Shown one piece after another: positions 3,856 to 63,100 of a stretch of 64,000 nt of DNA. Origin of the DNA: Octopus sinensis (Eukaryota); contig NC_042997.1 of NCBI RefSeq assembly GCF_006345805.1, positions 58,032,001-58,096,000 of the forward strand. Reading direction: 5' to 3'. Made by a program: the position numbers and the translations under genes. The notes under the pieces were generated by a model. That model did no database searches and was not told the origin of the DNA. It worked only from the letters and a program-made list of their open reading frames with translations. Numbering within the stretch: the stretch's first letter is position 1; the number at the start of each line of letters is the position of its first letter.

Positions 3856-27207
<23,352 letters not shown>

Positions 27208-34378: not shown

Positions 34379-34482
34379 TGTGAAAACACTTTCGTCGCTA
34401 AAATCCACGACCTGTTCACTGACAAAAATCCGTGCTGTCAGTGAACAGGTCGCGGTCTTAAAGCGACGAAAACACCTTGACA
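34379..34482. ncRNA. Two opposed hammerhead-like motifs with G3/C8 core (GUGAACA)
   Basis: Plus 34436-34482, minus 34424-34379; stems I and II present; each copy has a defect. Confidence 0.5.
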
Positions 34483-34589
34483 AACTAAACCCAAATGTTG
34501 AAGTGAACCGAACGGGCCCTTGTGCGCCCCTTAAATGGCTCACAAACACCTTCCACGCTGCAATTGTTATATATATATATATATATATG

Positions 34590-34620
34590 ATAAGGATGAT
34601 GATGATGGTGGTGGTGGTGG

Positions 34621-34666
<46 letters not shown>

Positions 34667-34722
34667 GGTGATGATGATGATGATGGTAGTGGTGGTGATG
34701 ATGGTGATGGTGGTGGTGGTGG

Positions 34723-34780
<58 letters not shown>

Positions 34781-34794
34781 GGTGGTGGTGATAG

Positions 34795-34828
<34 letters not shown>

Positions 34829-34875
34829 GGTGATGATGGTGGTGGTGGTGGTGATGATGATGATGGTGGTGGTGA

Positions 34876-34907
<32 letters not shown>

Positions 34908-34974
34908 ATGATGGTGATGGTGGTGGTGGTGGTTGTGGTGATGATGATGATGGTGGTGGTGGTGGTGATAGTGA

Positions 34975-35008
<34 letters not shown>

Positions 35009-35127
35009 GATGATGGTGATGGTGGTGGTGGTGGTGGTGATGATGGTGATGGTGGTGGTGGTGATGATGGTGATGGTGGTGGTGGTGGTGGTGATGATGA
35101 TGATGGTGGTGATGGTGGTGGTGATGG

Positions 35128-35158
<31 letters not shown>

Positions 35159-35256
35159 GATGATGGTGATGGTGGTGGTGGTGATGATGGTGGTGGTGGT
35201 GATGATGGTGATGGTAGTGGTGATGATGATGATGATGATGATGGTGGTGGTGATAG

Positions 35257-35287
<31 letters not shown>

Positions 35288-35289
35288 GG

Positions 35290-35320
<31 letters not shown>

Positions 35321-35322
35321 AT
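34590..35322. repeat. Compound (GAT)n/(GGT)n trinucleotide array, about 730 bp
   Basis: Interleaved GAT and GGT runs seen directly. Confidence 0.98.
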
Positions 35323-35339
35323 ATTACACTTAAGGACCA

Positions 35340-41779: not shown

Positions 41780-41951
41780 TCAGGAAAGTTTCAGCCCAGT
41801 ATCTCTGTAAGGTCTTGTTATGATTGTATTCACAAGCTGGTTGCTAAATATGAACACCTTTAGGTTATGAGCCGCTACAAGGAAGAAAAACAGCAATGAT
41901 ACATACTGCACCCAACCCCACTTTAGTTGGTACAGTAGGCTTGGAGAATAA
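41780..41951 (-). CDS. TMEM231: TMEM231 exon 7 (YSPSLLYQLKWGWVQY...GLKLS*)
   Basis: Second TM helix, stop at 41782-41780; 5' boundary is 41951 (TG acceptor) or 41939 (AG acceptor). Confidence 0.9.
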
Positions 41952-44900
41952 CAAGGAAGAGTCAAGGAAAAAAAGTAAACTTTGGAGGGAGAGAAAAGAA
42001 ATGCTGGTCTAAAGAAAAGCTACAAGTTGAATATAAAATTGATTTAGTATCATCAATGTAATGTTTGGTTTTCCATGCTGATGTATACTAGATATATTTG
42101 TAATATATCTTTCCTTTCAAGTTTTGGTACAAGGCCTGCAATCTCAAGGGGAGAGGGTAAATTGATCACACTGACACTGCCCCACCCCACCCAGTGTTTA
42201 ACTGGTACTTCTTTTATAAACTCTGGAAGGATGAAAGGCAAAGTCGACCTTGGCGGAATTTGAACTCAGAACGTAGTGGCAGACGAAATGCCGATAAGCA
42301 TTTCGCCTGGCGTGTTAACGTTTCTGCCAGCTCGCCGCCTAATGTGCTAATGATTCTGTCAGCTCACCACCTTATATAATGTAAATATTAATTTCAAATT
42401 TTTGTGCAGGGCCAGTGGTTTTAGGGGAAGGAGTAAGTCAATTATGTCAAATCCAGGACTCAACTGGTACATATTTTATCAACCCCAAAAGGATGAAAGG
42501 CAAAGCCAATCCTGGTGGAATTTGAACTCAGATCGTAAAGAGAGATGAAGTACCCTTAACGATTTCATCTGGCGTAATAATTCTGCCAGCTTGCTGCCTT
42601 ATCTCATGTAAATATCAATAATTGTTTTCTCATTAGAAATGAGATTTAAAGTTTGAAAAATGATTATTGTATTAACAATAATTTGAAGCTATGATGTACA
42701 TCAGAATAATAAACTAATAAATTTCAGCCAACATTGTAAATCAATCTTGAATTTAATTCACACACACAGTATTGGCTATCTAGATTTATTCTGTACTACA
42801 TCATAGCATCAAAACCAAACACTGCTCATCTGTCAGTAATATATTCACAATAATTTATCTCAGATATTTAATTTCTTAAGCATTACTCTAGCTATCCTCT
42901 TTCAAACCTTCTTTAACCTATCCCAAACTCATATTTTCTCTTTTTGTCTTGTAACCGCATTTATCTGGGAGGGGTTAAACTGGCTCCTATTGCATTCAGT
43001 GTCATGGGTCAAAACAATCCATGCATGTCTGTCGTTGGCCAATTCTGTAGTGTGTTGAAGCCATTCCCAGTTGCAGCAATGAATGTCAAAGACTTGAGGA
43101 CCAGAAATGAGCTCCATATCTGCTTTGACTGTTGTGAGCCACGTCTTCAGCTGACCACCTCTCCACTTATGCCAACCCAGGGGAGGATTTGATGCTATTG
43201 CCTTCTGGATGATTTCAATATGGGGGCACCGCAATGTATGACCAAACCACTGTAGTCTCCTTGTCAGAAGAGTTCCCTTAGGAGGTGAGAGATTGCAGTG
43301 AGCATAAAGTTGTTGGTTCAAAATGCAGTGTGAGATACACAGTCAGAGAAGATGATGAATACAGAAGCAGTCAAAGACCTCCAACTTCTGGAGATAAGCA
43401 ACATGCATTGGTCAGGTCTCACAACCATAGAAAAGAACTGTTTGGACGAGCACCTGGTAAATACAGCATTTTATAGTGAGGCTGTATTATCCACAACACT
43501 ACACAACTTTATGTTATCCATAACACCATGTCACTCTTCAGCCATCTAATCATTTGAAGTAGGCAGAAACTTTGTGAAAGACTGTTTTGCATAACTGTCC
43601 TTAAAGAGTTACGACCACAAATATTTTAGCTTAATACAGGGTGTCCCAAAAGTCACTGATAGGTTTCAATTTTTAATAACTTCCTTAACTTTACAAATAA
43701 ATGCATGAAATTTTGATACAATATAAATGATGTAATGGAAATTAATATGCACAAGTCAAATTTTGCAACACCACTACATCACATATGAAAAATGACATTG
43801 CTTAAATGGTAGCCATTTTCAGCTTTGCAAATTGAAACCCATCAGTGACTTTTGGGACACCCTGTACATACCCAAGTTTCTAGTTGCTCATCTTGATATT
43901 ATTCTATGTAAATGTTTAACCCATTAGCATTCAAATTATTGTCAAATGTAATACTTATTCATTTACATTATTTTGAATTAATCATGCTTTATCTTGAAGC
44001 TTCAAGATTATGATGATGTGATTGTTTATTTTTAGAATAACATTATAAGGTATGTGTCAGAAGCCAAATTTGACCAGTTTGAACATAAAGTAGAATATTT
44101 GGGCCAGATAAGGCCGGTTTGAATGCTAAAGGGTTAAGACATGCTATAGTTACTTAGGGGGAATATGAAACTCTATCTCATAAGTTTATAAACCAAGTCT
44201 TCCATAGTGTTGTATTTTGGTTGTTATTTTGGATAATCATCATGCTATCACCAGATCCACATTCAACATAAATTATCACCTATATAACAGAGTTTATCTT
44301 CTACTTTCATTAAGTTCTCTATCTGAGCAGTTCATAGTTTTTAATTCATAATTCATATTTCAAGTAAGAACCACACATACTCTTAGCTTTCGTAAACTAT
44401 TCCCAGCATTAAAAAATTCTTGCTACACATGATAGAAAGTTACATAGCTATTCCACTCAGCTATCAATTATAATACCAAAGTGCATGTGTGTGTGTGCGC
44501 GCATGCACACACACACACACACATGAGAATGTTGAAGATGAAGAACTGAAAGAAAGTAGGACAATTTAAAAGGTAATGTCCATAGCTTAAATAGTCTTTC
44601 AAAAATACCATTTAATAAAAGAAAAATTAAGAAACTATTTGCATAAAAGCAAATAACTAAATATAATAAAAAATACACAGAGAGTAAAATGAAATTAAAT
44701 AAAGATTGAAGAAATTATAGAACTCAGTACCTCTGCTGACCCAGAAGTTTTAAATACTCTAATAATAATTAGAGCCAAGGCGATGAGCTGGCAGAATCAT
44801 TAGCACACCAGGTAAAATGCTTAGCGGCATTTTGTTCATCTTTATGTTCTGAATTCAAATTCTGCCACGGTTGACTTTGCCATTCATCCTTTTGGGGTTG

Positions 44901-47900
44901 ATGTAATTAACTTTTCCCCTGCTCCCAAACTGTGCCAAAGTTTGAAACCAACATTAATCAGAGCCAATAAATATTTTAATTCTAAGGCACTCTTTACTCT
45001 GTAATGTACTTAAATATGCCCCACTATGCTATTCTGTTTTCACATCTGTCACCCTTTTTTGATCAGTAACATCTCAGATTACATCCAAATATCATTTACC
45101 TTATTGATAGATTTCTCTTCATTCAGAATATTTATTCTCTATGATTACGTTGTTATTTCACTACTTGTATCATAATAGAATCTGCTCTTTAAATTTTACT
45201 AGTTGCATACAATATTGACTCTTCACGAACTCTCCCACTGAATTTGCCTGGCTCCTCATGTGCTGAAAACCCACATCAAAGATTACATTCCAAGGATCCA
45301 TGCTATCATTAGATTCACATTCAATATAAATTATTATCACTTATATAACAGAGTTTATTCTTTTACTTTTCAGTAAGTTCTCTATCTGAGCAGTTCATAG
45401 TTTTCAATTCATAATACATTAATTCAAGAAAGAACTACATATACTCTTGGCTTTCATAAACCATTCCCAGCTCTCTGTACTACTCACCCAATTCACAGAC
45501 TCCAAATTCAAAATTTATCTTAGTCTTATCAATTTCAATCATTCTCTCCAGGTTCCAAATTCAAAAAGGTTGTTTATAAGCTATAACAATAGCCTTCTTC
45601 CTCAGAAATGAAAATAACATTAAGCACAGTGCTTAGATCCCTTCTAATCATTAAGGTATCAAACCTCTACAAATGTCTATTTTCAAAGTAAAATACCAGA
45701 ATGTATTGACCAGCAGCCACTCAGTAACTCTGGATTTTATGACTAACATACTTCAAGTCAGCTGTAGAAATATTTTAGTGGAGAGAGAAATTATAGAAAA
45801 GGTTAAATTTTCTTTTCAGTCATATGAAGTTTGTTGACATTTATAACCAAATCTATAATTAGCCAATAAACTGACCAACTGACAAATTGCAGAGTTTACT
45901 ATCTTCTGAAAGAATTACTAAAGTTGGTAGGTCAGTGATAGAACTAAATCAACAAGAACACCAATTATTTCATAATATATTCTTCGAGTCAATTTGAGTT
46001 AATGAAGCCCTGATCTTATTTTCCTTAATAATTTAAGTATTTTATATTTTGCATGCTGTAGAAAGTCATGTTTTTAATTTTTAATAAACCACACTAATTG
46101 CTTGTATCTTAGTGATGTGTGATTTGGTTATAATAAAAATTATGTATAGAGTGGTGTGGTTGTGTGGTCAGAAATTTGTTTCCTGACAACATGGCTTCTG
46201 AGTTCAATTCCAGGCGGTGACCTGAATAATAATAATAATAAGAAGAAGAAGAAGAAGAATTTCCCTAAGACAGCCATGAAGGCTGGAGGGTATATCAGCC
46301 AAAATGTTGAGTTAACAACAAACAAGATGAGTACAAATATCCATCAAATGTAAATAATACCCAGCTTACCAGTTTTTAGTCAAACTGTCCAGCCTATGCC
46401 AGCATGGAAAACAGACGTTGTTAAATGATGATGATGATGATGATGATGAAATTCAACAAAAAGGCATCCTAATCATGGAAAACTGGATGTAGTCATTTCA
46501 TTCAAATTAAGGTGCATTCCAGAAGTTTTGAGACTTATTTTACTGATAGTAATTTTAGCATGTCATTACTATACATATTATTACCTGACCTGCCGACTTT
46601 TATTTTTCCAGATTGAAAGAGACAGCTGTTACAGCACTTTGAACACACTCTACTGAACAGTACTTCTCACAGCTGGCTAGCTTGCAGAATGCAGTTGAGA
46701 TTGAAGACAATTTAGAAGCTTGCTATGCAATAAAGTTTTGTGTTAAACAAGGCAAAATGCTACAGACTGTTCATAGATTAACTTGTATGAGCTGAGCATG
46801 TTTTTTGCCGCAAAGAGAGATTCAAGGATAATGGAGAGGAGGTGAGAGACGATGAGAAGTGTGTGCATGTGTGTGTGTGTGGGAAAGAGGGACATCAGGA
46901 CATCCTGAGAAAATTTGCAATGGTTTGGATGAAGAACACTGTGTGTCTATAAAGACAAAAAGCATAGATTTAGTGTGGCAACCGTACACAGAATTATTCA
47001 TGAAGATCTGAACATGCAAAAAATTTATGCAAAGTTTGCTCCCAGAGGGCTCAGTGATCAACAGAAAGGAAGATGTGCTGGAGATGGTTGAGCTCATTAC
47101 TTCCAGTCCTAGAGTACTTGAATCTCTGGTGACTTGTAACAAAAGATGAGCCTACTGTTATGATCCAGAAACCAAGAGACAGAGTGCCCAATGAAAGCAT
47201 CTTGTCAGTCCTAGACCCAAGAAGGTCAGGCAAAGCAAGTCCATTGGGAAGCTGATGATGATCCCTGTTTTTAGCAGCAAGGGTTTCATCTATATCTATT
47301 GGGTTTTCTCTGATCAGATGGTCAACAAAGAATACTTTGTGGAGGTTTTGAGAGAGTTCAGAAAAGATTTTGTTGCAAAAGGCCAGAGCTCTTCCACTTG
47401 GGTTGGTGGCACCTGCACCAGGGCAATGCACCAGTCTGCAATTCCATCCTGGTAACCAACAACTTGACAGAGATAAGCATCAAAACTATCCCTCACCCTC
47501 TCTACAGTCTAGACCTTGTTCCTAAGACTTTTGGTCGTTCCCCAAGTTGAAGGAGAACCTCAGGGGCAGTTCTTTTGAAGATGAAGAAGGCTGTGTCAAG
47601 AGTCCTGGATACTTTCACTTTGGAGGACTTCCATGGGGCCTTCATGAAGTGGCTGGTGCACTACAACAAGTGCATTGAAGCCAGAGGATCCAACTTTGAA
47701 GGAGATTAGAGTTTTGTACTTCTTTGAAATTAGTAAATGTATCTCCTGAAAAAGTTTCAAAAATTCTAGAATGCACCTCAAATATATTCATTTGTCTTAT
47801 ATTCATTTTCCCAGGTTAGCATGGTTTAAGCAAGAACATATTACTGAGGTATTGTTTTACAGCCAGATGTCCTTCCTGTTACTAACCTATCTTACAAGTA

Positions 47901-50900
47901 AAGGTGTTTTCATTCCACTTGTCTTCAAAAGTAAAGAACTTGCAAATGATTATTGACAAATATCAATATTACCATCTACAGTTCAGTGCTTTTTTTATAT
48001 GAATTGTCGAATGTAAATGTACAGATGCATACTTCTGCTAGCATAGAAAAATGAATGAGAAACACACAAATGAATGATTAAAAGGATACATAAATTCTTG
48101 CCGTGGGTATTTAATGTTCACTGAAATAATAAATGGCATTTTGGCCCCACGTCCAATGGTCCAAGCATAGTAAGGTTCTATCAATTTGGTGGTCACTGGA
48201 AAGAAACAGAAAATTTAGTGCACTGTTATGATAAGGTAAAATATAACAAAACTGATTTCATTTTGTATTTATTTTCTCATGATAGCATGGGTGTGATGGT
48301 TTTGAAAAATGTTGATGTTATAATACTGTTGATGTTTTAAAAATTGGTGACAGGATAAGCATCTAACTGTGTCTGAAGTCATTGTACTTGGGAACTTTAT
48401 CTTTATTGCACATGGCTCCTCTTTGCTCTTGTATTCCTTTCAACCTGAGACTGGTGTCTTAAACACAAATTCATCTGTCATCCTGAAATGTCTGTACTAG
48501 TTCATATCCAAACCTAACCATATCTCAAACACATATTCTGACATACCAGACAACTGTGAACTCTTTCTGCTATTGGATATTTCTCTATCACTAAGAGTAG
48601 TATAAATCTTGTTGTCAATGAGTTAATTCTTTCTGCTGTCAGCATTATGTGAAGGCTACCACTAGATGTAATTGTTTTAACTGAAAATCCTTATGTCAAT
48701 TAGTTATTTTTGTGTAATCTACAGCTGCTGGCAATAGTGTAATATGGCTTTTACATATAACTTTCTTGAACTGTTTACTATTCAGTATAGAAGTTCAAGT
48801 TTGAAACAAGATGGATGATAAAACATATATAAACACCATATATTATGAAAGAGATTGTCAATTTCTTAATTATTTGACAGGCGATAAAATTTGGTTAAAA
48901 CAATTTTCAGACAAAAGCTTTTATAAAATTTATACTAGAACACATATTTAACCACAGCTCATATATTTCTCACCCTTGCACACTTGTAGATAGATGTTAA
49001 ACTGATAATAATGATGATTTCAATGCTTTTCAAACAATATATTTGTGAGAATAGGAATGATGACATTAATAATGTGCTGAATGTTTATGATGATGATAAC
49101 AATACCACTTTCTTTACTGCACATGTAAAAAAAAAAAACAATAAATATGAGCTATGTAAAAAAATTGCCAATGAGATATTTGACAAATAAATCAAGGTTA
49201 TTATCATGTTTTGATACCTGTCCACTGACATAATGCGCCCCAGTTCAGACTACCAAACTACCAACACAACAAGTGTCCAGCTCTAATAAATTTCATTTTC
49301 CTAGTGGTTAATTGATGGTTGTAGGAGCAATTTATCTTCAAAAGTTGTTTAACATATCTCTTTTGTTTATGATTGCATCTGAACTAAGATAATTACTAGT
49401 TCTAGGAATATGGAGTTAATAATATAGGAGTTTTTTGCAGAAATATAAAACCTGGAAATGTTTAGGAAGCTAAGGAAAATGACACCTCATCTTGGTGGTC
49501 TAAAGTGAGAATGGTAATGTAAGCAGTCTCAACTAAGACCAACCATGTAGGTGGTTTAAACTAAAATTAGGCAAATAAGTGAACTAAACTGAGACTAAAC
49601 TAGAACATGTCAAATAGGTTGGTTACACTGAGAAATGTAGCATTATATCAAAACAAAAAGTTTGGCTATATTAGGACAAATAGATAAATCAAAATAGATG
49701 AAATTGGTGGAGTAAACTAGTAAGTGGAGTAAAGAATGGCAGCTAAGGAAGTTAAAGTAGCACTTCTCAGGAGATTAAATAAGGATGAATAGGTGGCCAA
49801 AATTATAAAAATAAAAATAATCTAAAACAAATAGGGGAACTAAATAAAGAAAAGTGAGTGACTAAAATAGAGCAAATAGGGGAAAAGACTTGGACAAATA
49901 GGTGATTAGACTAGGACACTCGACAGGTGTTAAATGAAGCAAGATATTGTTCCTCCAGCAAATTTTTACAAAAGAATGAACATACCATTTCTTTCATGAT
50001 ACTTCTTCAGGATATTAGACAAATCATAAGCTGAGGCATATACACTGTCAGAATCAATTATGGATGTCTGGAAATGAATGGGAGAACAGATTGAATTATA
50101 TACATTGAAAGTATGTTAGTTAATATATCTCATGAAATATTGCGTCAAGATGAATTATATAACATAGAGTTTGTTTTACAGCAATTTTGCATATCTAATC
50201 ATCATCATCGTTTAATGTCCATTTTCCATGCTAGCATGGGTTGGACGGTTTGACCGGAGTCTGGGAAGCCAGGAGGCTGCACCAGGCTCCAGTCTGATCT
50301 GGCAGTGCTTCTACAGCTGGATGCCCTTCCTAACGCCAACCACTCCGTGAGTGTAGTGGGTGCTTTTTACATGCCACCGGCACAGAAGCCAGTCCAGGTG
50401 GCGCTGGCATCGGCCACGTTCGGATGGTGCTTTTTACATGCCACCGACACAGGTATCACAACCACAATTTCCATTTGATATTTATTTTGATATGATTATA
50501 AGTATAATTTCCATATTCTTTGCTTGGTTATTATCATTTAAGCAAAATTGGTAAAATGTTGGATAAAATCTCATATACTATTGCATTAAGTCCCAGAGCC
50601 AAAAATTGGATCCAGTGAAGTACTGAGATCAATTAAATCAACCATATTCCTCCCACTAAATCTGAAGTCTTGAACATATACTAGAAATGATCACCTCCTT
50701 TTGTTCTTGTTAACATCATTAGAACCAACAATACAATTATCATTGTCCTCATATACCAGCAGCACAATAATACTCATTACTCATTATTATGTCTATATCA
50801 TTGCCGATGTAATATTCCTCTTTCTCCTCTTCCCTCCATTGGTACCACCACAACCACCATACTCACAACTGTAGTTAACATTACCAATCATTAGTCTGCA

Positions 50901-53900
50901 GTTGATGACTTATGACTGACTGACATTGGAAAGCAAATTCACATGAACATAATTCCAAACAAAAAAGAATTGATTACAAACCCCTAAAAGTCAAGAGATC
51001 AACTTCTGCTAACGGCAATTTATTGTGCCAATTTGGCAAACTGTTCCACCTAAATTGTATCCTTAGGCAATTACTACAACTAAATGAAATTCTTGATAAG
51101 AATTAATAAGATAGGATCCCCACATACTTAAATAATTACTTTCTCAATCCTAAATTTAAAGACAATTGTTTTAAGACTTAACTATAGTTTGTGCTTTCAA
51201 ATATTGCTACCATTATCGCTTTGTATTCTTGGATACAGCACATTATCATTTTACATCATTTTACCATATTTGCATGGGTTGTGCAAGTCTTCGTATGTAC
51301 AGCACATCACACTAGTTGGTGAGATCCTGCATCAGATCTCATCTTCATCCTCTCCTGAGATCAGCTTTCACCATTTCTTCCTATGCCTTTCTTGGTCTTC
51401 CTCTTCCACAAGCTCCAATTGGTTTTAGAAACTTCTTTCTCATTAAATAATTAATATTAAGAAAGGGGGTATAAAACCAAAGTCTTTCTACTGTAGAAAT
51501 ATTGGGTTCTGCAAAGCCATCCAACCAATGTAAAGGTGAAAAATAATCATCATAATTTTTTTTTGTTTAATCTTTTGTTTACTTATTAACATATTTTTAC
51601 AGGAATAGGAAGGAGTAACAAGTTGTACACCCCAGATTAAACGGTGTGTGCAGCCATGCTTTGTGAACATAACTGCAAAGACATTGCCATGGAGAGTAAC
51701 CAGCAATACTCACTGCAACAACTACTCCATCTTGCAGGGATCATTTCTCAGAGGGGCTGTAGTTATCCTGATTTGTGGAGAAATCAACAGTGCAGGATCC
51801 AAGAGCACCTGATGGTGACTAGCACAAACATACTAGATAGTCTAGATAGTGACTAGCACAAACAAACAATGGCTGGTTAGGCTCCTGTATTTGTTTATCT
51901 TCCTCTCCTCTGCATTACGAGTTGCAGCATTTTGCAGTTTGTCTCCCTCATATAAGAAGTTTACAGCATCGAAATGCTTACTATCCTTGCAGTCAAGACC
52001 TACTGGCTTCAGTTGTGACATGAAGCCAGCTGTGTGGAAGCCCCTTCTAATTATACCATTCAGGGTGGCATGTCAGGAGAACCCGCCTGCACTATGGCTG
52101 CAAAATAATTGATGTAGGCTGAATTCATTGACTACAGTTCCATAATGGCATTTGTGTGGCTCACACACAGACCAAGGTGCTGAGCCACCTTGATACGAGT
52201 GGACTCATCATCAAGATGGTTAATGAAGAAGGGATTGTATTGAGCTATGCACCACTGTTTGACTGTGAAGCAGAATGGAGATGGGCAAGACAGCACTGGT
52301 CTAAGGATGTCTCATTCTGCCTGAAGATAGATTTTGATTTGATGTCATTGCAGTTACATTAGACACCTGTATTCTGGGGGATGGCAAGACCTTCAATGGT
52401 CAAATTGGCCAGAGCTGTCTATTCCAGTTCCTGGGTCACATTGAGTTCAGTCATCCTGTCGGGTGTTTTGTTGATGAGGATGTGGCTGGAGGAGATTGAG
52501 GAAAAGATCATCTACCAGAGCCAAGTCAATAGGGGAATTGAAGCCAAGGCCACTGAACTTAACAGGTAGTTTAGCCTGTTGCTAGCTGGTGCTGTCAAAA
52601 CTGACATTGCAGATCAGTTCAGCACAACAACTGATGGTGGCATTGAGTTGCCTGAGGCAATCTGTGAGAGGATGACATGGCATGCTACATAGTGAGAAAA
52701 GGAGCTTAGGCAGAGCAAAACAATTCCTCAAAAGGAACAGCGTGGGGTGGTGGTGTCAATGAGAGGCAATCTCTCAGACATCCTAGACAAGTCTGCAAGC
52801 TTAGTCTCCAGGGACTTTGTTATGGCTTTCAGGAGGATTGAGAAGCCAAGAATGCAGATGGCATCTCCTGGAGTCAGATGAGCCCCTGTCAAGATGGGTT
52901 GGATGCTGAATATGGTGTCCTAGAAATCAACCTCATCACAGTTCAAGTTTATCACCTCTGACTTGGGCAGGTTGATCTCAAATCTAAGAAGCTTTAGGGC
53001 TGGGATGACCTGCTGAAAGTCCCCAACTACAGACACAGCTGAGCCAGCCAGGGTCACGTCATCCAGGTACCAGACACTGAAGGGTCAGTGGACTGGTTGG
53101 GCAACATCACTGACAACCAACACAAAAAGGAGTGGACCATGAAGGTCATCTTGCTGGACACCTGTGGAAAAAGGAACCCTGTTGTCAGCAGCCATGAGTG
53201 TGCTGGATGTTCCAGTCTTGCAAGCTGTTGGTAGCAAGTACCTGGTCTATAGATGACGCTAGTGCTTCAGTCACAAAAGTATGGGCAGCTTTGGGGATTC
53301 TGATGATGATTCTCTGCCACTGTGTAAAGCCGGAGATTGACACCAAGACTCATCTTGGCTGAGTGGGGTCTGCTCATAGTATTGAGAAGTATATTCTCCT
53401 CTGGAGGTTAGGCAGCTTGGGCAGTGCCACCAATGCAGAGATTCCAAGGTGCATCGGGTGAGTTTGACACAAGAGAGGTGGAAGAAATTGTTACAACAGT
53501 TACAGCATTTTCTTCCCTATACACACACACATAATATATATATATATATTGCTGACTGGCCCCTGTGCCAGTGGCACATAAAAGCACCCACTACACTCTC
53601 GGAGTGGTTGGCGTTAGGAAGGGCATCCAGCTGTAGAAACTCTGCCAGATCAAGATTGGAACCTGGTGCAGTCATCTGGTTCGTCAGCCCTCAGTGAAAT
53701 TGTCCAACCCATGCTAGCATGGAAAGCGGACGTTAAACGACAACGACGACGATGATGATGATGCTTGTTAAGCATCTTTACGCTTCGTACAAATTTATAA
53801 TTCATAGCTATTTAATGCTATTGTGCCTGCAATCCACCTCTGTCACTGCTGGTGTGATACCATCAATTTAAAAATTTATCCACAGATGATATGAACAGTA

Positions 53901-54545
53901 GTGACATCTGAATACAAATCTCAGTGTTTGAATGCCTTGCTTATATATATATATATATATATATCATCATCATCATCATCATCATTTAACGTCTGCTTTC
54001 CATGCTAGCATGGGTTGGACGGTTCAACTGGGGTCTGGGGAGCCCGAAGGCTGCACCAGGCCAGTCAGATCTGGCAGTGTTTCTACAGCTGGATGCCCTT
54101 CCTAACGCCAACCACTCCGAGAGTGTAGTGGGTGATTTTATGTGCCACCGACACAGGTGCCAGACGAGGCTGGCGAATGGCGACGCTCGGATGGTATTTT
54201 TTATGTGCCACCAACACAGGTGCCAGACGAGGCTGGCAGACGGCCACGCTCGGATGGTGTTTTTATGTGCCACCGACACAGGTGCCAGATGAGGCTGGCG
54301 AATGGCCACGATCGGATACAGCACGGAGGCCAGTCGATGCGGTACTGGCTACGGCCACGTTCGGATGGTTTTCTTGTGTGCCACCGGCACTGGTACCACA
54401 AAGATACAAATTCCATTGATGTTCATCTATTTTGATTTGTTTTGATTTGATTTGATTTGATTTGAAACATACACTTATGCCTATACATACATATATATAT
54501 GTTTAAAAACCGTTCATTTAATTTGGTTTGAGGGTAGTGATCCTA

Positions 54546-54578
<33 letters not shown>

Positions 54579-57500
54579 TACAATAAATATATTATGTGTT
54601 ATGTATATGAATTAAAATTTAAAAAAATTTCATTAAATATCTTAAAATGGAAATGAAATTACAGAAAGATACAGGAATGTAAAATAAATGTCAATCCTCT
54701 TATTTGTCTGTCTCTCAGCCAACATGATTAATAAGAAGCAAAATGGCTTTTAGAAGGAAAAGAAAAAAATAATGAAACAAAAGGCTGTCCAAGGAAAAGC
54801 TTAAAGTCTAATAAATTCACAGAAAAATTACTCTGTTAAAAAAAAAAAACAGAAAAAAAAAACTCATCAAAAAGACAAACTCGCTTTTATTGTGTTTATT
54901 TTCTTTTTTGTAAGAAAGGACATTCAGTCTACAAGAGGTGAATTTCTAGCTAAAAGGTATTAGTGACACAAAATGTTTGGAAATTCCTCACTGAAGAAAA
55001 TTCTTCTAAGATATATGATAAATAGGGCAGCGTTGCCTTGTTAAAAATTACAGCATAATGTTTGTTGTTTTGATTCTGAAGTGGATTTAATGTGTGAGTG
55101 TAGATCAGACAGGACCTTTTGCTAGAAACAACAGTCCAAATTAATGCTGTCACAAATATGAAACCAATGTTAAAGCTCTAACAATGAGTATTGGTATGAA
55201 TTACCAAACTTAACTGTGTGATAATATTTTTAAAGGTCATGGAGTTTTAGTTGCATTAACAGTTGTTGCTATTTTTGTTAAGCATCAGGCTGACTCTTAC
55301 TGAGAAGACATGTTAGAGGTATTTCATCTGAGGCCATCACTTTTCCTCATTTTTTTAATATTAAGTATTACAATTTCTGAAGTATAAATATTCTGTTTTT
55401 TTCTAGTGGTTGTTCACAAAAGGAAAAAATGTTGCAAGCATTGGGAAAATGCATGAACGTTGCTATTGCTCTATTTTGTTGAGCATGGCTTTCTTCTTGC
55501 TGTGCTTGGAAACAATCCACATAAGTAGTCAGTAAATAACTATTACAGACTTACCAATCACCACAATCTTCCAATAACCTTATCTTTAACATGTTAAAAG
55601 TGTTATACACAAATGTTCACTTGTCATACACTCAAGCTGGGTTATCAATAGTGGTCCATATAACAAACATTCTCTTAGATACAGATTCAGTGATGTTTAG
55701 CAAATGAAACATTAACCTCTCTCCTCAAAAGAGGATATCATTTCAGCTTTCCATAATGGAAAAATAGCAGTTACAATCACCATCACCATCGTTTAGCATC
55801 TATTATCCATGCTGGCATGGGGTGGATGGTTTGACAGGAGCAGGCCAGTTGGAGAGTTGTCCAGATTCCAGTTATTTGTTGTGGCAAGGTTTCTATGGTT
55901 GGATGCCCTTCCTAACACTAACTATTCTACAGAGTGTGTTGGGTGCATTTTACATGCCATCATTACAATAGTAAACAAAATAAAACAAATATTAAAAGAA
56001 GAGGGTGATTTATCTGTAGTAGAAAGGAGAACAATTACATCATTAAACTTACATTAAACCGTATATTATTGCCTTTATAGTGAAGTGGTATTCTCTGTAC
56101 AGTTTCCAATGTACCATACACATTTATTTTGGCACCTGGTATTACAGATGAATGATGAATATATGCCATAGAATTCATAGTTATTGAACCGTGCTTCTGC
56201 AAAAAGAAAGACAATAAGGAATTTAAATGTCATGTTATATAACCTGTTAGGAACATTACTAAATTGATTACTACAGTAACTTGCTATTGCTATTTATTAA
56301 GTCCTTAATAGGATTTTGAGCTTAGCACAGCAAAGCAACAAAATACTTGAGAATTAAAGTGTTTTCATGGCATTACAACTGACAGTTAAGCACATGGAGG
56401 GTTGTATGTCTTTGCCAGTGCGAAGATATGAACCCTCAATACCTTAGTTGATAGACTGGTATGCTATTGAATTGAGTGCGTGCAATACAGTCAATATTTT
56501 AAAACAAAAAGTCTGTTCATGGGTAAAAGGCTGGCGATTTGTATCTAGTGGGTTTGTTACTGAAAGCCAGTGTCTTGAGATTCATGCTGAGTGTTGATAG
56601 CTAGTAGAGTGGTAATCTATACTTGGTGGAAGCACATAAGTCATTGATAGCTACTGAACTGATTGTTGATAGCTAGTGTATTGGGAGTTTGAAACAAATG
56701 ATATATTTGTTGACAGATTGTAAGGTACTAAAATTCTCCTGAAATTAAATACAGAGAAAAATACTTCATAATAAATATTACCTTTCACGAGTGCCTTGAA
56801 TATTGTTTTCAAGTCTTACTAAAAAACTAAATACATTTAACCCTTCAGGATTCAGATTACTCTTTTAAATGTAATGCTTATTTATTGTTTTGAATTAATC
56901 ATGTATTATCTCATAGCTTTGAGATTTTGATGAGGTGACTGTCTATTTTTAAAACGACATTGTAGGGTATGTGTGAAAAGCCAAATCTGGCCAGTTTGAA
57001 TATTAGAGTTGGATATAGCCAGTTTAAATACTAATGGGTTAATGCTGCCCTACTTTCTTACTGCTAAATGAGGTAAAACAGAGAATTTCTTGCCACTGTG
57101 GAAACCATGCCATTTCAAAAAGACTTGCCAACCCCACAAAATCTTCTTATAACCCTATCTCTAACATGTTAAAAGGTGTGATACACAAAATGTTCACTTG
57201 TCATACATTCATGCTGATTTCCAAAGAGTAGTCCATATAACAAAAACATTTTACATACATTATCCTGTTTCTGTTACAGGTTATCAATTGAAGGAGGTCG
57301 TTGAGTGTGAATCAATAGAGTTAAAACTGTTTCTAATTTCAATGATATGAAATATTTAATACTGAACTTACATGCAATTCATAATGGAAAAACAGTAACA
57401 TTTCAATGGCAACGACATTTTCTGAATCATATAGTGGCACTTCAAGGGTAAGCTGTAAGTTATCCAATTTCCCATCACCATTTATGTCTTCTTCCACTGA

Positions 57501-57811
57501 CTGCAATATTTACAATGAATCTTTTTAAAAATAAGCTCTTTGCAATATCCAAATAAACAACTACATAAATAAAAACAAAATTTAGTTCAGTTTTATATTT
57601 AAGAGACGAGGAATTATGTACATTATTTACATTTGACGGATATTTGTCCTCATCTTGTTTGTTATTAACACAATGTTTTGGCTGATATACCCTCCAGCCT
57701 TCATTAGGTATCTTGGGGAAATTTTGAACATGGGTTCTCATTCTTAAGGTGGTGGTGGTGGTGGTGGTGTTGTTGTTGTTCTTCTTCTTCTTATTATTAT
57801 TATTATTATTA

Positions 57812-57865
<54 letters not shown>

Positions 57866-60098
57866 AGTCACTGCTTGGAATCTAACTTGGAATCTTGGGT
57901 TTAGTAGCCTGTGCTTTTAACCACTAAACCATATGCCCGTGGGCAATTATGGAGTGAATTTTAGGGCTTATAAATCTAATATTTTCCTATCCTTCCTTAA
58001 TACAGGTTCCCATATGCTACTCATATCTGCTTAGGAGGTTGTTGTGTCCTAGCATATGTGCTGCTTCTTTTAGTTTTTGTATTTTCCAGTGGTGTTCTCT
58101 GTTTATTATTTTAACTTCATCCCACAAGGGGAGATGGTCTCCATTTTTCCATACATGATCAGCTATACCTGATTTATCAATATCTTCTCATGTCACAGCT
58201 TTGTGATGTTTGTCTACCCTTATTTTGAGGGGATGGCATGTTTCACCTTTGTATAAGCTACCACAGCTGCATGAGATGGAGTACATGCAGTCTTTGATAG
58301 CTATTGATAAATTGGGTATAGCTGATCATGTATGGAAAATGGAGACTATCTCCACCTGTGGAATGAAGTTAAAATAATAGACAGAGAACACCACTGGAAA
58401 ATACGAAAACTAAAAGAAGCAGCACATATGCTCAGACACAACAACCTCCTAAGCAGACTGTGTGCAGATATGAACAGCATATGGGAACCGGTATTAAGGA
58501 AGGATAAAAGAATATTAGATTTATATGCCCTGGAATTCACTCCATAATTGCCCATGGGCATATGGCGTTAAGAGTGTGGGCTACTAACCCCAAGATTCTG
58601 AGTCCAATTCTAAGCAGTGACCTGAATAATGATAATAACATCGAAAAATACCTTAGGAATGAGAACCCAGGTTCGAAATTTCCCCAAAACACCTGATGAA
58701 GGCTGGAGGGTATATCAGCTGAAATGTTGTGTTAACGACAAACAAGATGAGGACAAATACCCATCAAATATAAATAATGTATAAAATTTAGGTCACCTCT
58801 TTTGTTCAAGAATTAGAATCTTTACAATTCTTAGTTATAGTTCTTACAATTTTTGTACACAGTATTTTGAATCTTCTATAGCATCCTATTTTGGAATTTC
58901 ATATCCTCAACATAGCTACAAATGTGTTGGAGAGTTTGAGCTTCCTGTTTCAGAGCTTTGGACTATTCTACCCCTTTTGTTTACTAAACTTTAAAAAGTT
59001 CAGCTGTTGCTGGCATCACCACCATTGCCATTTCTAAACCAAAACCAACATACTAACACTCAAACCTGATGAAGAAGCCAATATATAATCTCTCAACCTG
59101 TCACAAATAGCCAAATTCCCTCTAAATTAATCCTTGTCTTCCAGGAAGAATACACTGGAATACATGTAGTTCTAGATAGACAAAATGACGGCATGGTCAT
59201 AGCTGGAATGCCTTTTTTATCACTTAGTTTAAAGTAAAACAGGCAATTTAAGAATGATGAGAGAAAAAGAGGAATTTATCCTTAAATCAAGAGGTCTGGT
59301 TTAAATACTTGGTTGCATTTAGTAGAATGAACCCTACTTTGGTTCTCAAGGACCAGGTGCTGGTTTTAAACTGGGTAACAGGTTAAACCTATTATCCAAG
59401 AACTCAGAATACAAAGAGCTGAAACAGATACTACAAGGTATCTTGTTCAACATGCTATGAATTTTCCCAATCCACTGCCTTGGACTGGTATTTTATTTTA
59501 TTAACTCTGAAAGGAAGAAAGATACACTGAATACTGCTGAATCAAGGTTTTAAACCAGTGGTTTGCAACTGGATTCCATATGACCTTTGGGGGTCTATAC
59601 AAGATTTCATTGTTAAAAATTATGTGCAATAAATTGGTTATACTTTTACAGTACATGAAATATTTCAGCCATTTCTTTTTGTACAATGCCTAATAATATA
59701 TAATTATAAAAAAATAATAGGATTTTAAAAACATTGCATGGCTATGAGGGTCCACCCAAGTAAAATATGGATAAAAGGGGCCCATAGGTAAAAATAGCTG
59801 AGAACCATTGTTCTAAACAACATTTATTTTACAATGGTTGGAAATATTCTGATGTGTAGATACATCCCTGCTTTGTCAGCCTAGAGAAACAAATAGTAAA
59901 GTAATGATGATGATTATAATGGCAAAAGCTGGATTAATATACAGCATGGGCCAAAAGTCATGCACAAAATATGTTCAATACATTCCAGAATTGTTAAAAG
60001 GCATGCTTCTATTTTTCTAAAATTGAATAAAATAAATAAAATGATGATGACTACACACCTACTTGTACATGATAAACTAAATGAACAACAACAACAAC

Positions 60099-60157
<59 letters not shown>

Positions 60158-63100
60158 TAAAACATCAAATGTTTTGGTGTGTGGCTTCTGACTCTCCCTG
60201 TACTATAGCACTTAAAAAATACTGCAGCAAAATAAAAACAACAAAACAAAGTAAAATAATAGAAGTTGAATAAATCTACTCCTCCGTTCATATATATATC
60301 AGAACCAATTGTATCATAGGCTGAGGGAAACCTGCTGCTGGTAATCATGTAATCCAGTACCACTTGCTCCAAGACAAGTAGTTGGTGATTAAACTGGACT
60401 CCTACTAGGCCTGCCCAGTAAGTAGGGAGTGTGGAACTTTAGCAGAATAAAAACAAAACCTGTTAAAAGTAATGAACTCCTTGAGAGCCAATGACACCCC
60501 TTTCTTGAGGAGGAAATGGGTGCTACCAGGTTTACCAAGCCCAATGAGAATGGAAGTGACAACTTCTATACTGGGTTGATTGAAAGCCCAGGAGTGAAGA
60601 AGATTGGTAAAAAAAAAATTTAGGTACCATAATAACAGAAATGCTATGTGAATGATTTTAGTTTTCATCAATATGAGTTGACTTACTTTTATCAGTGGAA
60701 TCCTTAGGGAATTTTGTTGTAATTTGTTGTAATTTTCAAAAGTACTGTATGTGACATATGACTGAGTGCTACCAGTAGTATATAAAAGAAAAAGCAGTTC
60801 CTTTTTGAATACAATTTTTGGTTGATCTCTGAAACGAGCATCACTAATCCAAATACCTGAGAAAAATACAGAATAAAAACAAAATAAATGCTCAAAATAG
60901 CTCATTTAACGAATGTACTGTCTTTAAACAAAGTGTCCTATGTGTTTTTTGGTGCCTATAATAATTTGATATGATTATTGTGATTTATAAAGAAGAAACA
61001 GCATAGTATCTACAGAAGCAGATGTTAAGCTATGTATTAGAAAAGTTTGGACAGCACTTAAAAGTCTCAGCACAAAAATGGAAATCTAAGCTCTCAGACA
61101 ATCTGAAAAGGAACATCTGCACAGTACTTTAAACTGTATTACTTTATAGTTCTTTCAGTTAGACACTAATCAAAAAGCATGAAATTATGCAGGCTTTGTC
61201 TCATTTTGAATGTGTCTTTGAAGGATTACCCAAGCAGAAAAAGATCATATAATAAGCTGCCAGATGTATCAGACACCATTAGAGAAAGAAGGGTCTGCTG
61301 GTTAGTGACACTTTGTTTTTGACACCTCAGAACAGTTGCCATGTGAAGGCATACATTGATTAGTGATGTCACAAAGTGGAACTATCACATACTATGGAAA
61401 ATAGAGATGGATGATCAGGGTCATGCAAATCTGAGGAAGCTTGAATTGATGATGACAATAAGTTTGGGTAGTTGTGGGACAATAATAAAGGGGGGGGGAG
61501 GGGAGAAAGAAATAGAGTAGAAGAATGTGTGGTTGATCCAAATACCTGAGACATTTTGAGTGTCTTCTGGTAAAGTAAATCAATCTATGCAACTATTAAT
61601 TATTAAATATATAGGGCATAACTTATACACGATAATATAGGAGCAGCAGCAGTACAAGAAGTAACACTTACTGAGTTTCTTCTCATAATTGCAATCAAAA
61701 TTCACTGAAGTAGCTCTGTCAGGGCTTATCCAGCACTTCTGACAACTTCAAACCAAATTCTGAAATAAACCAACCATGTAGCGGCTCTACAGCAAGAAAC
61801 CTGTTCTACTCTGACCCTTTTCTCTCATTTTTACTCCCTTTTACTTCTCATCTTCTCAGGGTTTGTAGTCTTTTAAGTTACATGGTCAATTCACTAGTGT
61901 TGGTGGTATGAAAAAAAGCACCCAGTAGTACACACTGTAAAGTGGTTGGCATCCAGTCATAGAAACTATGCCTAAGCAGACACTGGAATATGATACAATT
62001 CTTGGGCTCATTGGGTTCTGTGAAACCATCCAACCCATGCCAGCATGGAACATGGACATTAAATGATGATGATGATAATGATAATAATGACAATGGAAGG
62101 TTCACAACTTCTGCTTGTTTCAAACACTACCACTTGAAGTATATGTCTAAGCAGATTTTCCAGATTTCACTTCTTTGGCATGCAAAACCATGAAATGTAT
62201 AATAAACCATGTGAGATCAAGCAAATGTTTACACCTGTTGTCCTAAATAAGACACTTTCCTTGTCTCCAAAGGAATCATATAATTCCACTAACTATAGAA
62301 TACTGGGAACCTCAAGTCTTAAGAGTTTGTGTTTTCTAATGCTACGAACCGCTGCATACCTTGGAAACCTAATATTTTGCAAGACAATAGATATGCATGT
62401 TTACCTTGAGAGTTCCACACTTGCATGATACTGAATCGCTTATTATGATGCCTAACAGGATTGTAATTAGATATACTGAATTGTTCAAAAGAGTTTTGAT
62501 CTATGATTTTGACCCTGGAGATCTGCTCGAAAGTATTTTAAGATGATGTGGTGTGGTAGGTGGAAGATTTAGTGGCTATTTCTAGTAAATCAAGTGATAG
62601 TGTAGAGCTCTCTCCTTAGTTTGTAATGAAGTAAACTACAGAAAATTTTCGAAACACTAAACTGGCGATCCTATTCATTACCGTTTTTATATATAAGGTT
62701 AATCGCCAGTAAAATTTATGACGTAGGGGATCGGTTAGAGTTAAGTAAGAGTCTAGGGCGAGGGGCTAAGTAGCAGGCTAGTCCAAGGTTGGAAAGCTAT
62801 ACTTATATTGAAATATTTTGTACATGCACTAAAAATACGGGGCTGCACAAAATTTCTGTTTGTTTTATGATGTTTGGGATACCTGTTTTTAGGGGATGTT
62901 TTAAGAAATAATCCGTATGTAAATATAGTACTAAAGTTTCAATTGGGTATGGCAATTAGTATACCATCAAAAAATTTAACTCGGAAGTTTTCATCTTTTA
63001 CGAGAAATGATAATTTATTTTTTAATCAATCTTAATACTCGAAATTTATAGGAGAGAGAAAGGGAGCAGGAAATTGTGTCGTTGTCAATGAGATGTACAA

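What the first reader, a model, noticed from the sequence alone, without database searches (positions are those of the whole stretch)
41940..48089. TMEM231 minor (U12) intron that may end in a non-canonical TG
Seen: perfect U12 donor GTATCCTTTT and branch site TTCCTTGAC (branch A at 41962). The acceptor that keeps ungapped colinearity (YPRQEF-I-YSPS versus vertebrate YPVEVI-S-YQPG, from memory) is TG at 41953-41952, 10 nt after the branch A. The first AG (41941-41940) is 22 nt away and would delete YSPS in frame. Known: U12 3' sites are chosen largely by distance from the branch point and tolerate odd terminal dinucleotides. Inference: a GT-TG U12 intron, or two isoforms differing by 4 aa just before TM2.
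Basis: partly seen in the sequence, partly recalled or inferred. Interest (0 to 1): 0.7.

Follow-up and report, generated by a model that had tools for sequence, protein, structure and literature searches.

The report
Octopus TMEM231 minor intron ending in TG
The last intron of the octopus cilium gene TMEM231 is an ancient minor-spliceosome (U12) intron that very probably ends in TG instead of AG, a rare but already documented kind of splice site that the public gene model already uses.

Summary
The window carries a seven-exon TMEM231 gene on the minus strand. Its TG-spliced product (313 aa) is identical to RefSeq XP_029642118.1 of Octopus sinensis.

Introns 1-5 are ordinary GT-AG introns. Intron 6 has:
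- a perfect U12 donor (GTATCCTTT, 48089-48081);
- a perfect branch site (TTCCTTGAC, branch A at 41962);
- TG as the 10th base after the branch A;
- the first AG as the 22nd base.

The same TG is present in independent assemblies of O. vulgaris and O. bimaculoides, so it is not an assembly error.

The orthologous intron lies at the same position and phase elsewhere. It is GT-AG U12 in four gastropods (spacing 11-13) and AT-AC U12 in amphioxus and pufferfish.

Only the TG junction keeps the Y-x-P motif. Y is present in 118 and P in 114 of 133 diverse TMEM231 proteins. TG scores best of all seven in-frame 3' ends, and AG scores 18-19 bits lower.

GT-TG U12 introns are known but rare: 1 of 770 human minor introns and 29 of about 73,700 conserved animal minor introns.

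No RNA data could be reached, so use of TG, and any minor use of the AG, remains inferred. Verdict: a real feature, a new member of a known rare kind, of modest interest.

The parts
41780..63326 (-). TMEM231 coding region. Seven exons: 63326-63188, 60856-60687, 57500-57372, 56196-56053, 50067-49986, 48195-48090, 41951-41780 (stop included).
   Evidence: tblastn probe and manual splice-site reading. The 313-aa product is identical to XP_029642118.1 of Octopus sinensis. Pfam TM231 scores 329.5 bits.
48090..48195 (-). Exon 6. It ends with the first two bases (AT) of the Ile codon that the intron splits (phase 2).
48081..48089 (-). U12-type 5' splice site GTATCCTTT. The first intron base is G at 48089.
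   Evidence: It is the only GTATCCTTT in the window. The sequence is identical in O. vulgaris and O. bimaculoides, and GTATCCTT or ATATCCTT sits at the same spot in four gastropods, amphioxus and Tetraodon.
41952..48089 (-). Intron 6 under the TG reading: 6138 nt with GT...TG termini. Under the AG reading it would be 41940-48089 (6150 nt).
41961..41969 (-). U12 branch-site motif TTCCTTGAC, with the branch adenosine at 41962.
   Evidence: Orthologous introns have TCCTTAAT, ACCTTAAC, TCCTTGAC or TCCTTAAC 11-13 nt before their 3' ends.
41952..41953 (-). Proposed terminal dinucleotide TG of the intron. The last base is the 10th after the branch A.
   Evidence: TG is conserved in three Octopus assemblies. 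It is the only 3' end that reproduces the RefSeq protein, and it has the best family score.
41940..41951 (-). Twelve bases, T TAT TCT CCA AG. They supply the third base of the Ile codon and the Y-S-P-S codons, completed by the C at 41939. They are exonic if TG is used and intronic if AG is used.
   Evidence: Y258 and P260 are invariant in 17 homologs and present in 118 and 114 of 133 diverse representatives.
41940..41941 (-). First AG downstream of the branch site, the 22nd base after the branch A. It is a candidate alternative or cryptic 3' splice site, in frame, and its use would delete YSPS.
   Evidence: The 309-aa product is absent from the protein collection.
41780..41951 (-). Last exon, encoding (I)YSPSLLYQLKWGWVQYVSLLFFFLVAAHNLKVFIFSNQLVNTIITRPYRDTGLKLS plus the stop. 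It contains the C-terminal hydrophobic segment.
41953..42134 (-). [quoted passage not shown] It is 97-100% identical between O. sinensis and O. bimaculoides, more than the adjoining coding exon.
   Evidence: It is single copy in the window and has no significant RNA fold (z = -0.9). Its function is unknown. A role in supporting the weak 3' splice site is only a guess.

Best explanation
Intron 6 of Octopus sinensis TMEM231 is an ancient U12-type (minor spliceosome) intron, and its productive 3' end is the TG at 41953-41952.

Inferred mechanism:
- U11 and U6atac recognise the donor GTATCCTTT.
- U12 pairs with TTCCTTGAC and bulges A41962.
- The minor spliceosome does not scan. It takes a 3' site lying about 10-15 nt from the branch point, so exon ligation happens after the G at 41952.
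- The terminal G that partners the intron's first G is kept. The unusual penultimate U is tolerated.
- The AG 12 nt further on lies outside the preferred spacing and is used little or not at all.

The resulting mRNA encodes the full 313-aa protein with the family's Y-x-P motif just before the C-terminal membrane segment.

The state is derived. The molluscan ancestor had GT-AG at this position, and an A-to-T change, or loss of the A from TTAG, in the Octopus lineage produced TG.

Shown here: the sequence signals, their orthology and conservation, and the protein colinearity. Inferred: actual RNA cleavage at TG and dependence on the minor spliceosome.
For: (1) The signals are a perfect 9/9 U12 donor and a 9/9 branch motif. 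The donor has poor U1 complementarity (TAT|GTATCC), whereas introns 1-5 have GTAAGT, GTAAGC or GTATGT.

(2) The intron has orthologs at the same position and phase, in the codon before the invariant Y:
- GT-AG U12 in Patella (spacing 11), Lottia (12), Babylonia (13) and Gigantopelta (11);
- AT-AC U12 in Branchiostoma (11) and Tetraodon (about 15).
In all of them the exon begins one base before the Y codon, exactly where the octopus TG ends.

(3) Protein evidence.
- Pfam TM231 scores 329.5 bits for the TG product against 310.6 for the AG product.
- A profile built only from non-cephalopod sequences ranks TG first of all seven in-frame 3' ends (399.1 bits) and AG last (381.3).
- Y258 and P260 are invariant in 17 homologs.
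- Among 133 diverse representatives, Y is present in 118, P in 114, 126 have identical spacing, and none is 4 residues shorter.

(4) TG is present in three independent assemblies: the window, O. vulgaris GCA_951406725.2 and O. bimaculoides GCA_001194135.2.

(5) The TG product is letter-for-letter XP_029642118.1, and the O. bimaculoides RefSeq XP_014772534.1 uses the same junction. The AG product is not in a 15-billion-protein collection.

(6) Literature.
- The optimum branch-to-3' site spacing is 11-13 nt, non-canonical termini are spliced, and 3' site choice is error-prone (PMC3584512).
- GT-TG U12 introns are documented: one in mouse (PMC1557818 Table 2), one in human MIDB (PMC13602164 Table 1), and 29 among conserved animal minor introns (PMC10639083 Suppl. 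Table S1).
- TMEM231 is a U12 gene in human and zebrafish (PMC9992838).
Against: - No transcript or junction-read evidence could be obtained.
- I could not see on what evidence the RefSeq models rest. If they came from protein alignment alone, they are not independent of the colinearity argument.
- A spacing of 10 nt is at the short edge of the preferred range.
- Mutational work on an AT-AC intron found the penultimate A essential (Dietrich et al. 2001, recalled from memory; the paper was not held). A penultimate U is therefore expected to weaken the site.
- The downstream AG is preceded by a long pyrimidine-rich stretch and could serve as a U12 or cryptic U2 acceptor.
- The three Octopus species are too close (intron about 86-97% identical) for conservation of the TG, or of the 12 nt after it, to prove selection.
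Confidence: 0.78

Rival explanations
1. Both 3' ends are used at appreciable levels. The minor spliceosome ligates at TG (313-aa protein) and at the AG 12 nt downstream (309-aa protein lacking YSPS). This could be splicing noise or a regulated switch that lowers the amount of functional TMEM231.
For: - U12 3' site choice is described as error-prone, and alternative 3' site use is the one kind of alternative splicing seen for U12 introns (PMC3584512).
- 76% of human non-canonical U2/U12-like sites take part in alternative splicing (PMC4176328).
- The AG is in frame and follows a pyrimidine-rich stretch.
- The last ~180 nt of the intron are unusually conserved, which could reflect regulation.
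Against: - No 309-aa isoform exists in the protein collection or in the 90% cluster that holds the RefSeq models.
- The deletion removes two of the most conserved residues of the family, so such a product is unlikely to be functional.
- 22 nt is beyond the spacing reported as usable (from memory of Dietrich et al. 2001).
Confidence: 0.14
2. The AG at 41941-41940 is the real, predominant 3' splice site. Octopus TMEM231 then lacks the four residues, and the RefSeq models are homology-driven errors.
For: AG is the canonical partner of a GT U12 donor. GT-AG makes up 74% of animal minor introns against 0.04% for GT-TG. A second TTCCTTG copy (41958-41952) lies 9-18 nt upstream of this AG.
Against: - The second TTCCTTG has T where the branch A must be, so it is a poor branch site.
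- The AG lies 22 nt from the only good branch A.
- The product loses the family's Y and P, scores 18-19 bits lower, and has no counterpart among 133 diverse homologs.
- The 12 nt still read Y-(S/T)-P-S in frame in all three species, exactly where gastropods and chordates have Y-x-P-G directly after their 3' splice site.
Confidence: 0.06
3. The TG is an assembly or sequencing error, or a private variant of the sequenced animal. The true genome has AG at 41953-41952.
For: A single base difference separates TG from AG.
Against: The identical sequence TTCCTTGACTCTTCCTTG|TTAT is found in three assemblies of three species made by different groups and technologies.
Confidence: 0.01

Closest known systems
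GT-TG U12-type introns of mammals and other animals (Sheth et al. 2006, SpliceRack; Minor Intron Database; Larue & Roy 2023)
   Same: They share a U12 donor and branch site, a GT start and a TG end. That is a single-base departure from GT-AG that keeps the terminal G. They are rare: one in mouse, 1 of 770 in human, and 29 of about 73,700 conserved animal minor introns.
   Different: This is a different gene and lineage. Here the ancestral GT-AG state can be seen in gastropods and an AT-AC state in chordates. An in-frame AG lies only 12 nt downstream and appears to be passed over.
The U12 intron of vertebrate TMEM231 (human and zebrafish minor-intron gene, Joubert/Meckel ciliopathy gene)
   Same: It is the orthologous gene. 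In Tetraodon and amphioxus the U12 intron sits at exactly the same codon and phase. Human and zebrafish TMEM231 are experimentally minor-spliceosome dependent (PMC9992838, PMC8280824).
   Different: The chordate introns examined here are AT-AC, 341-413 nt long. The octopus intron is GT-TG and 6.1-11.2 kb long. I did not inspect the human intron itself.
GT-GG and GT-AT U12 introns, for example ARAF GT-GG conserved between human and mouse (Sheth et al. 2006, Table 3)
   Same: They are non-canonical 3' termini on G-type minor introns. They are conserved between species and differ from a canonical pair at one base.
   Different: The non-canonical base is different. Those cases have transcript support, and this one does not yet.
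TG alternative 3' splice sites in U2-type introns (Szafranski et al. 2007, PMC2374985)
   Same: A TG acts as an acceptor near an AG, giving small in-frame differences.
   Different: Those introns have U2-type donors and branch sites and were explicitly separated from U12 introns. The donor here cannot serve U1 well, so this is not a member of that class.

Membership tests
U12-type (minor spliceosome) intron | 5' splice site matching |RTATCCTTT | tested here: met
   GTATCCTTT at 48089-48081, 9 of 9 bases, starting exactly at the end of exon homology.
U12-type (minor spliceosome) intron | Branch-site motif TTCCTTRAY close to the 3' end (optimum 11-13 nt; PMC3584512) | tested here: met
   TTCCTTGAC at 41969-41961. 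The A lies 10 nt before the TG end and 22 nt before the AG end.
U12-type (minor spliceosome) intron | Orthologous introns in other lineages are U12-type (U12 introns are strongly conserved) | tested here: met
   The intron has the same position and phase, with U12 donor and branch motifs, in four gastropods (GT-AG), amphioxus and Tetraodon (AT-AC). It is lost in two bivalves.
U12-type (minor spliceosome) intron | Removal depends on U11, U12, U4atac and U6atac snRNPs | not testable with these tools
   This needs snRNA knock-down or an in vitro splicing experiment. It has been shown for human and zebrafish TMEM231 in PMC9992838, not for octopus.
GT-TG subclass of U12 introns | Genomic termini GT...TG at the boundaries that reproduce the colinear protein | tested here: met
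   Only the join 48090|41951 gives the 313-aa protein identical to XP_029642118.1. It has the best profile score of the seven in-frame options.
GT-TG subclass of U12 introns | The mRNA junction is observed in transcripts | not testable with these tools
   No transcript-derived protein or contig covering the junction was found. The evidence note of the RefSeq models could not be read.
TMEM231 (Pfam PF10149, TM231) | Full-length match to the family profile above the curated cut-off | tested here: met
   329.5 bits against a cut-off of 23.2, with residues 1-300 aligned to profile positions 1-300 of 301. Identity is 92% to O. bimaculoides TMEM231 and 38-54% to other animal TMEM231 proteins.
U2-type introns with TG alternative acceptors (Szafranski 2007) | [quoted passage not shown] | tested here: not met
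   The donor TAT|GTATCC matches the U1 consensus CAG|GTAAGT at only 4 of 9 positions, and it is a perfect U12 donor.

The most novel reading that the evidence does not exclude
A UG 3' splice site is used constitutively by the octopus minor spliceosome while an in-frame AG only 12 nt downstream is ignored. The near-invariant ~180-nt block at the intron's 3' end would be a dedicated element that makes this weak site work. Alternatively, that element toggles between the TG (functional protein) and AG (YSPS-deleted, probably inactive protein) junctions, controlling the supply of a ciliary transition-zone component.
Probability: 0.12. Interest if true: 0.5.

Novelty: new member of a known kind. Interest (0 to 1): 0.3.

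Why it matters
This is a clean natural example of the rule that the minor spliceosome picks its 3' splice site by distance from the branch point rather than by the AG dinucleotide. A visible evolutionary series accompanies it: AT-AC in chordates, GT-AG in gastropods and GT-TG in Octopus, all at one conserved intron position in a ciliopathy gene.

It also has practical value. Two of the four public octopus models of this gene (the O. vulgaris CAI9715125.1 and the older O. bimaculoides A0A0L8HGA7) read through the U12 donor and lose the C-terminal membrane segment. The case therefore shows how non-canonical minor introns break annotation.

It does not change what is known about splicing. GT-TG minor introns are already catalogued, and RefSeq already carries this junction.

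Tried and rejected
- **Transcript-level evidence.** The homolog search and the cluster look-up returned only genome-derived models. They returned no fragment or isoform from transcript assemblies and no 309-aa AG product. The exact-sequence look-up found the 313-aa protein only on the genome contig.
- **Other cephalopods** (squid, cuttlefish, nautilus). None were in the protein hits, and the locus-fetching tools do not cover eukaryote genomes otherwise, so the AG-to-TG change could not be dated beyond the genus Octopus.
- **Other in-frame 3' ends.** Terminal CT, CC, TA, TC and CC at spacings 4, 7, 13, 16 and 19 all score below TG and have no terminal G. Shifting both boundaries by one base would give Ser or Met instead of the Ile seen in RefSeq, and would break the U12 donor register.
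- **The AG upstream of the branch site** (41981-41980). It is out of frame and upstream of the branch point.
- **The second TTCCTTG copy** (41958-41952) as a branch site for the AG. It has T at the branch position.
- **RNA structure** in the conserved 3' block: none (z = -0.9).
- **Rfam scan** of the window: no hits.
- **A-to-I editing.** It cannot turn TG into AG. Editing the AA at 41942-41941 would give an out-of-frame site.
- **Primary papers not held.** Dietrich et al. 2001 and 2005 and Levine & Durbin 2001 could not be read. What I say about them is from memory and marked as such.
- **intronIC or PWM scoring.** Not run, because the matrices were not available.
Full report
**1. The observation**

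On the minus strand, exon 6 of the gene ends ...CCACGGCAAGAATTTAT at 48090. The next bases are GTATCCTTTTAATC, with the G at 48089.

At the other end the sequence reads TTTTTTTCCTTGACTCTTCCTTGTTATTCTCCAAGCCTACTG.
- TTCCTTGAC occupies 41969-41961, and its only A is at 41962.
- TG occupies 41953-41952.
- The first AG occupies 41941-41940.

I count the last intron base as the n-th base after the branch A. By that count TG is at 10 and AG at 22.

Joining 48090 to 41951 gives ...IKYPRQEF-I-YSPSLLYQLKWGW. Joining to 39 removes YSPS in frame. Every coordinate in the finding is right.

GTATCCTTT occurs once in the window, against 0.60 expected from shuffles. TTCCTTRAY occurs six times, against 4.0 expected. 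So the motifs are not remarkable by count. They are remarkable by position: they sit at the exact bases where protein homology stops and resumes. From those rates the joint positional chance is about 1e-9.

**2. The gene**

A tblastn probe plus reading of the splice sites gives seven exons on the minus strand: 63326-63188, 60856-60687, 57500-57372, 56196-56053, 50067-49986, 48195-48090 and 41951-41780.

Introns 1-5 have ordinary donors (GTAAGC, GTAAGT three times, GTATGT) and pyrimidine-tract CAG acceptors. Only intron 6 differs.

The 313-aa product matches Pfam TM231 end to end at 329.5 bits. It is letter-for-letter XP_029642118.1, transmembrane protein 231 of Octopus sinensis. The window is therefore O. 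sinensis or something indistinguishable from it. O. vulgaris differs at one residue near the junction, YPWQEF.

The public RefSeq model thus already contains this junction. This fact limits the novelty.

**3. The intron is U12-type**

The donor and branch site are perfect matches to the U12 consensus. The donor matches the U1 consensus at only 4 of 9 positions.

I fetched the genomic loci of homologs and located the same exon boundary in each. In every species that has the intron, it lies in the codon before the invariant Tyr, in phase 2.

| Species | Termini | Branch motif | Spacing (nt) |
|---|---|---|---|
| Patella caerulea | GT-AG | TCCTTAAT | 11 |
| Lottia gigantea | GT-AG | ACCTTAAC | 12 |
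| Babylonia areolata | GT-AG | TCCTTGAC | 13 |
| Gigantopelta aegis | GT-AG | TCCTTAAC | 11 |
| Branchiostoma belcheri | AT-AC | TCCTTAAC | 11 |
| Tetraodon nigroviridis | AT-AC | CCCTTAAA | about 15 |

Two bivalves (Dreissena, Mactra) have lost the intron.

Human and zebrafish TMEM231 are experimentally minor-spliceosome-dependent genes (PMC9992838, PMC8280824). This is an old bilaterian U12 intron.

**4. Which 3' end is used**

(a) *Orthology of the boundary.* In all six outgroup species the exon begins one base before the Tyr codon. The octopus TG ends at exactly that place.

(b) *Protein family.*
- Y258 and P260 are invariant in 17 homologs from molluscs, amphioxus, fish and a protist.
- I searched 1.84 billion representative proteins and aligned the 133 best hits that span the junction. 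Y is present in 118 (F in 9 more) and P in 114. In 126 the spacing is identical, and none is four residues shorter.
- Pfam scores the TG product 18.9 bits above the AG product.
- A profile built without any cephalopod sequence ranks TG first of the seven in-frame 3' ends (399.1 bits) and AG last (381.3).

(c) *Not an error.* O. vulgaris (GCA_951406725.2) and O. bimaculoides (GCA_001194135.2) have the identical TTCCTTGACTCTTCCTTG|TTAT.

(d) *Annotation.* RefSeq models of two species (XP_029642118.1 and XP_014772534.1, both 313 aa) use the junction. The AG product is absent from a 15-billion-protein collection and from the 90% cluster.

Two other public models read through the U12 donor (EFMYPF...) and lose the C-terminal segment. 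These are O. vulgaris CAI9715125.1 and the older O. bimaculoides A0A0L8HGA7. They show what happens when a pipeline cannot accept this intron.

(e) *Literature.*
- The optimum branch-to-3' site spacing is 11-13 nt, non-canonical termini are spliced, and 3' site choice is error-prone (PMC3584512).
- GT-TG U12 introns are catalogued: one in mouse (PMC1557818 Table 2), one of 770 in the human Minor Intron Database (PMC13602164 Table 1), and 29 of about 73,700 conserved animal minor introns (PMC10639083 Supplementary Table S1).
- From memory only, because the paper was not held: Dietrich et al. 2001 reported that spacings under 10 or over 20 nt activate other sites, and that the U12 spliceosome cannot scan to a distal site. 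That would place the AG at 22 nt outside the usable range.

**5. What is not shown**

I could reach no transcript data. The use of TG at the RNA level, the absence or level of the AG junction, and dependence on the minor spliceosome in octopus are all inferences.

I could not see the evidence note of the RefSeq models. If they rest on protein alignment alone, they add nothing independent.

The three Octopus species are close. Intron identity is 97% between O. sinensis and O. vulgaris, and 86-94% in alignable blocks between O. sinensis and O. bimaculoides. Conservation of the TG, or of the 12 nt behind it (one change, Ser to Thr), therefore proves accuracy of the sequence, not selection.

A penultimate U is expected to weaken the site, for two reasons that I recall from memory:
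- Mutational work on an AT-AC intron found the penultimate A essential.
- Spliceosome structures show the branch A contacting the penultimate A, and the first G contacting the last G.

**6. Mechanism proposed**

The U11/U12 di-snRNP binds the donor and the branch site. A41962 attacks G48089. The 3' site is taken within the short reach of the minor spliceosome, and the G at 41952, which can still partner the 5' G, is ligated.

The state arose from a molluscan GT-AG intron, either by an A-to-T substitution or by loss of the A from ...TTAG. The distance rule kept the junction, and therefore the reading frame and the Y-x-P motif, unchanged.

My probabilities are:
- TG is the predominant productive site: about 0.78.
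- Appreciable dual use of TG and AG: about 0.14.
- AG is the main site: about 0.06.
- The TG is a sequence artefact: about 0.01.

**7. Comparison and verdict**

This is a member of the known, rare GT-TG subclass of U12 introns, in a gene already known to carry a U12 intron. It is not a U2-type TG acceptor of the Szafranski type, because the donor test fails.

Three points are mildly new:
- the lineage (cephalopods);
- the visible AT-AC, GT-AG, GT-TG series at one orthologous position;
- the in-frame AG 12 nt downstream, which makes it a neat natural test of the distance rule.

Interest is modest (0.3). Novelty: new member of a known kind.

**8. Side observations**

- The last ~180 nt of the intron (42134-41953) are 97-100% identical between O. 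sinensis and O. bimaculoides. That is higher than the coding exon next to it. The block is single copy and shows no stable fold.
- O. vulgaris and O. bimaculoides carry an internal TAATAG|GTATCCTTTC inside intron 6. This is an acceptor followed by a second perfect U12 donor, which would regenerate the donor after splicing. The O. vulgaris model starts an exon there. In the window exactly these 16 nt are deleted, between 45937 and 45936.
- The pipefish Stigmatopora argus encodes TMEM231 without introns.
- Elsewhere the window holds exons of a pyridine nucleotide-disulphide oxidoreductase gene (10.6-12.2 kb, minus strand) and LINE reverse-transcriptase fragments.

Noticed in passing
window 41953-42134 (minus strand); L001 about 28517-28698: The last ~180 nt of intron 6 are 97-100% identical between O. 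sinensis and O. bimaculoides. Identity is 76-94% further upstream and 92-96% in the adjoining coding exon. The block is single copy in the window and has no significant RNA fold (z = -0.9).
   Followed up: partly
L009 26811-26832 (O. vulgaris); L001 about 23476-23497 (O. bimaculoides); deletion point in window between 45937 and 45936 (minus strand): Inside intron 6 both species have TCTATCTAATAG|GTATCCTTTC, an AG acceptor directly followed by a second perfect U12 donor motif. After splicing to exon 6 it would recreate TTTAT|GTATCCTTT, so it looks like a recursive splice site. The O. vulgaris model CAI9715125.1 begins an extra exon there. In the window exactly these 16 nt (TAATAGGTATCCTTTC) are missing.
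   Followed up: partly
P0018 (O. vulgaris CAI9715125.1) and P0019 (O. bimaculoides A0A0L8HGA7): Two public gene models read through the U12 donor (…QEFMYPF…) and lose the conserved C-terminal membrane segment. They are probable misannotations caused by the non-canonical minor intron.
   Followed up: yes
L007 501-1430 (Stigmatopora argus, pipefish): The TMEM231 coding sequence is uninterrupted by introns (930 nt translate directly to the 309-aa protein), which is retrogene-like. Tetraodon keeps the introns.
   Followed up: no
L004 (Dreissena polymorpha) and L008 (Mactra antiquata): Both bivalves lack introns 5 and 6, including the U12 intron. A single exon covers residues ~190 to the end. In Dreissena the preceding intron holds a tandem array of short copies resembling the end of the previous exon.
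   Followed up: no
window 10604-12199 (minus strand): ORF pieces match Pyr_redox / Pyr_redox_2 (pyridine nucleotide-disulphide oxidoreductase; they look like dihydrolipoamide dehydrogenase). This is a neighbouring gene downstream of TMEM231 on the same strand.
   Followed up: partly
window 7713-9202 (-), 32737-33708 (-), 42929-43321 (-, inside intron 6): There are LINE-type reverse-transcriptase fragments (RVT_1, one with a PHD finger). Inside intron 6 there is a C-terminal LINE-like ORF remnant with no Pfam hit.
   Followed up: partly
window about 34480-35400; also about 32.4, 39.2, 50.1, 53.7 and 53.9 kb: A ~900-nt trinucleotide-type microsatellite is open in all frames (poly-His, Met/Val, Asp/Gly, Ser/Pro). 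Several copies of a SINE-like repeat have a translation containing HHHRLTSVFHASMGWTV.
   Followed up: no
window 41952-41969 (minus strand): The heptamer TTCCTTG occurs twice, 11 nt apart (41969-41963 and 41958-41952). The TG that ends the intron is the end of the second copy. The second copy has T where a branch A would be needed.
   Followed up: partly
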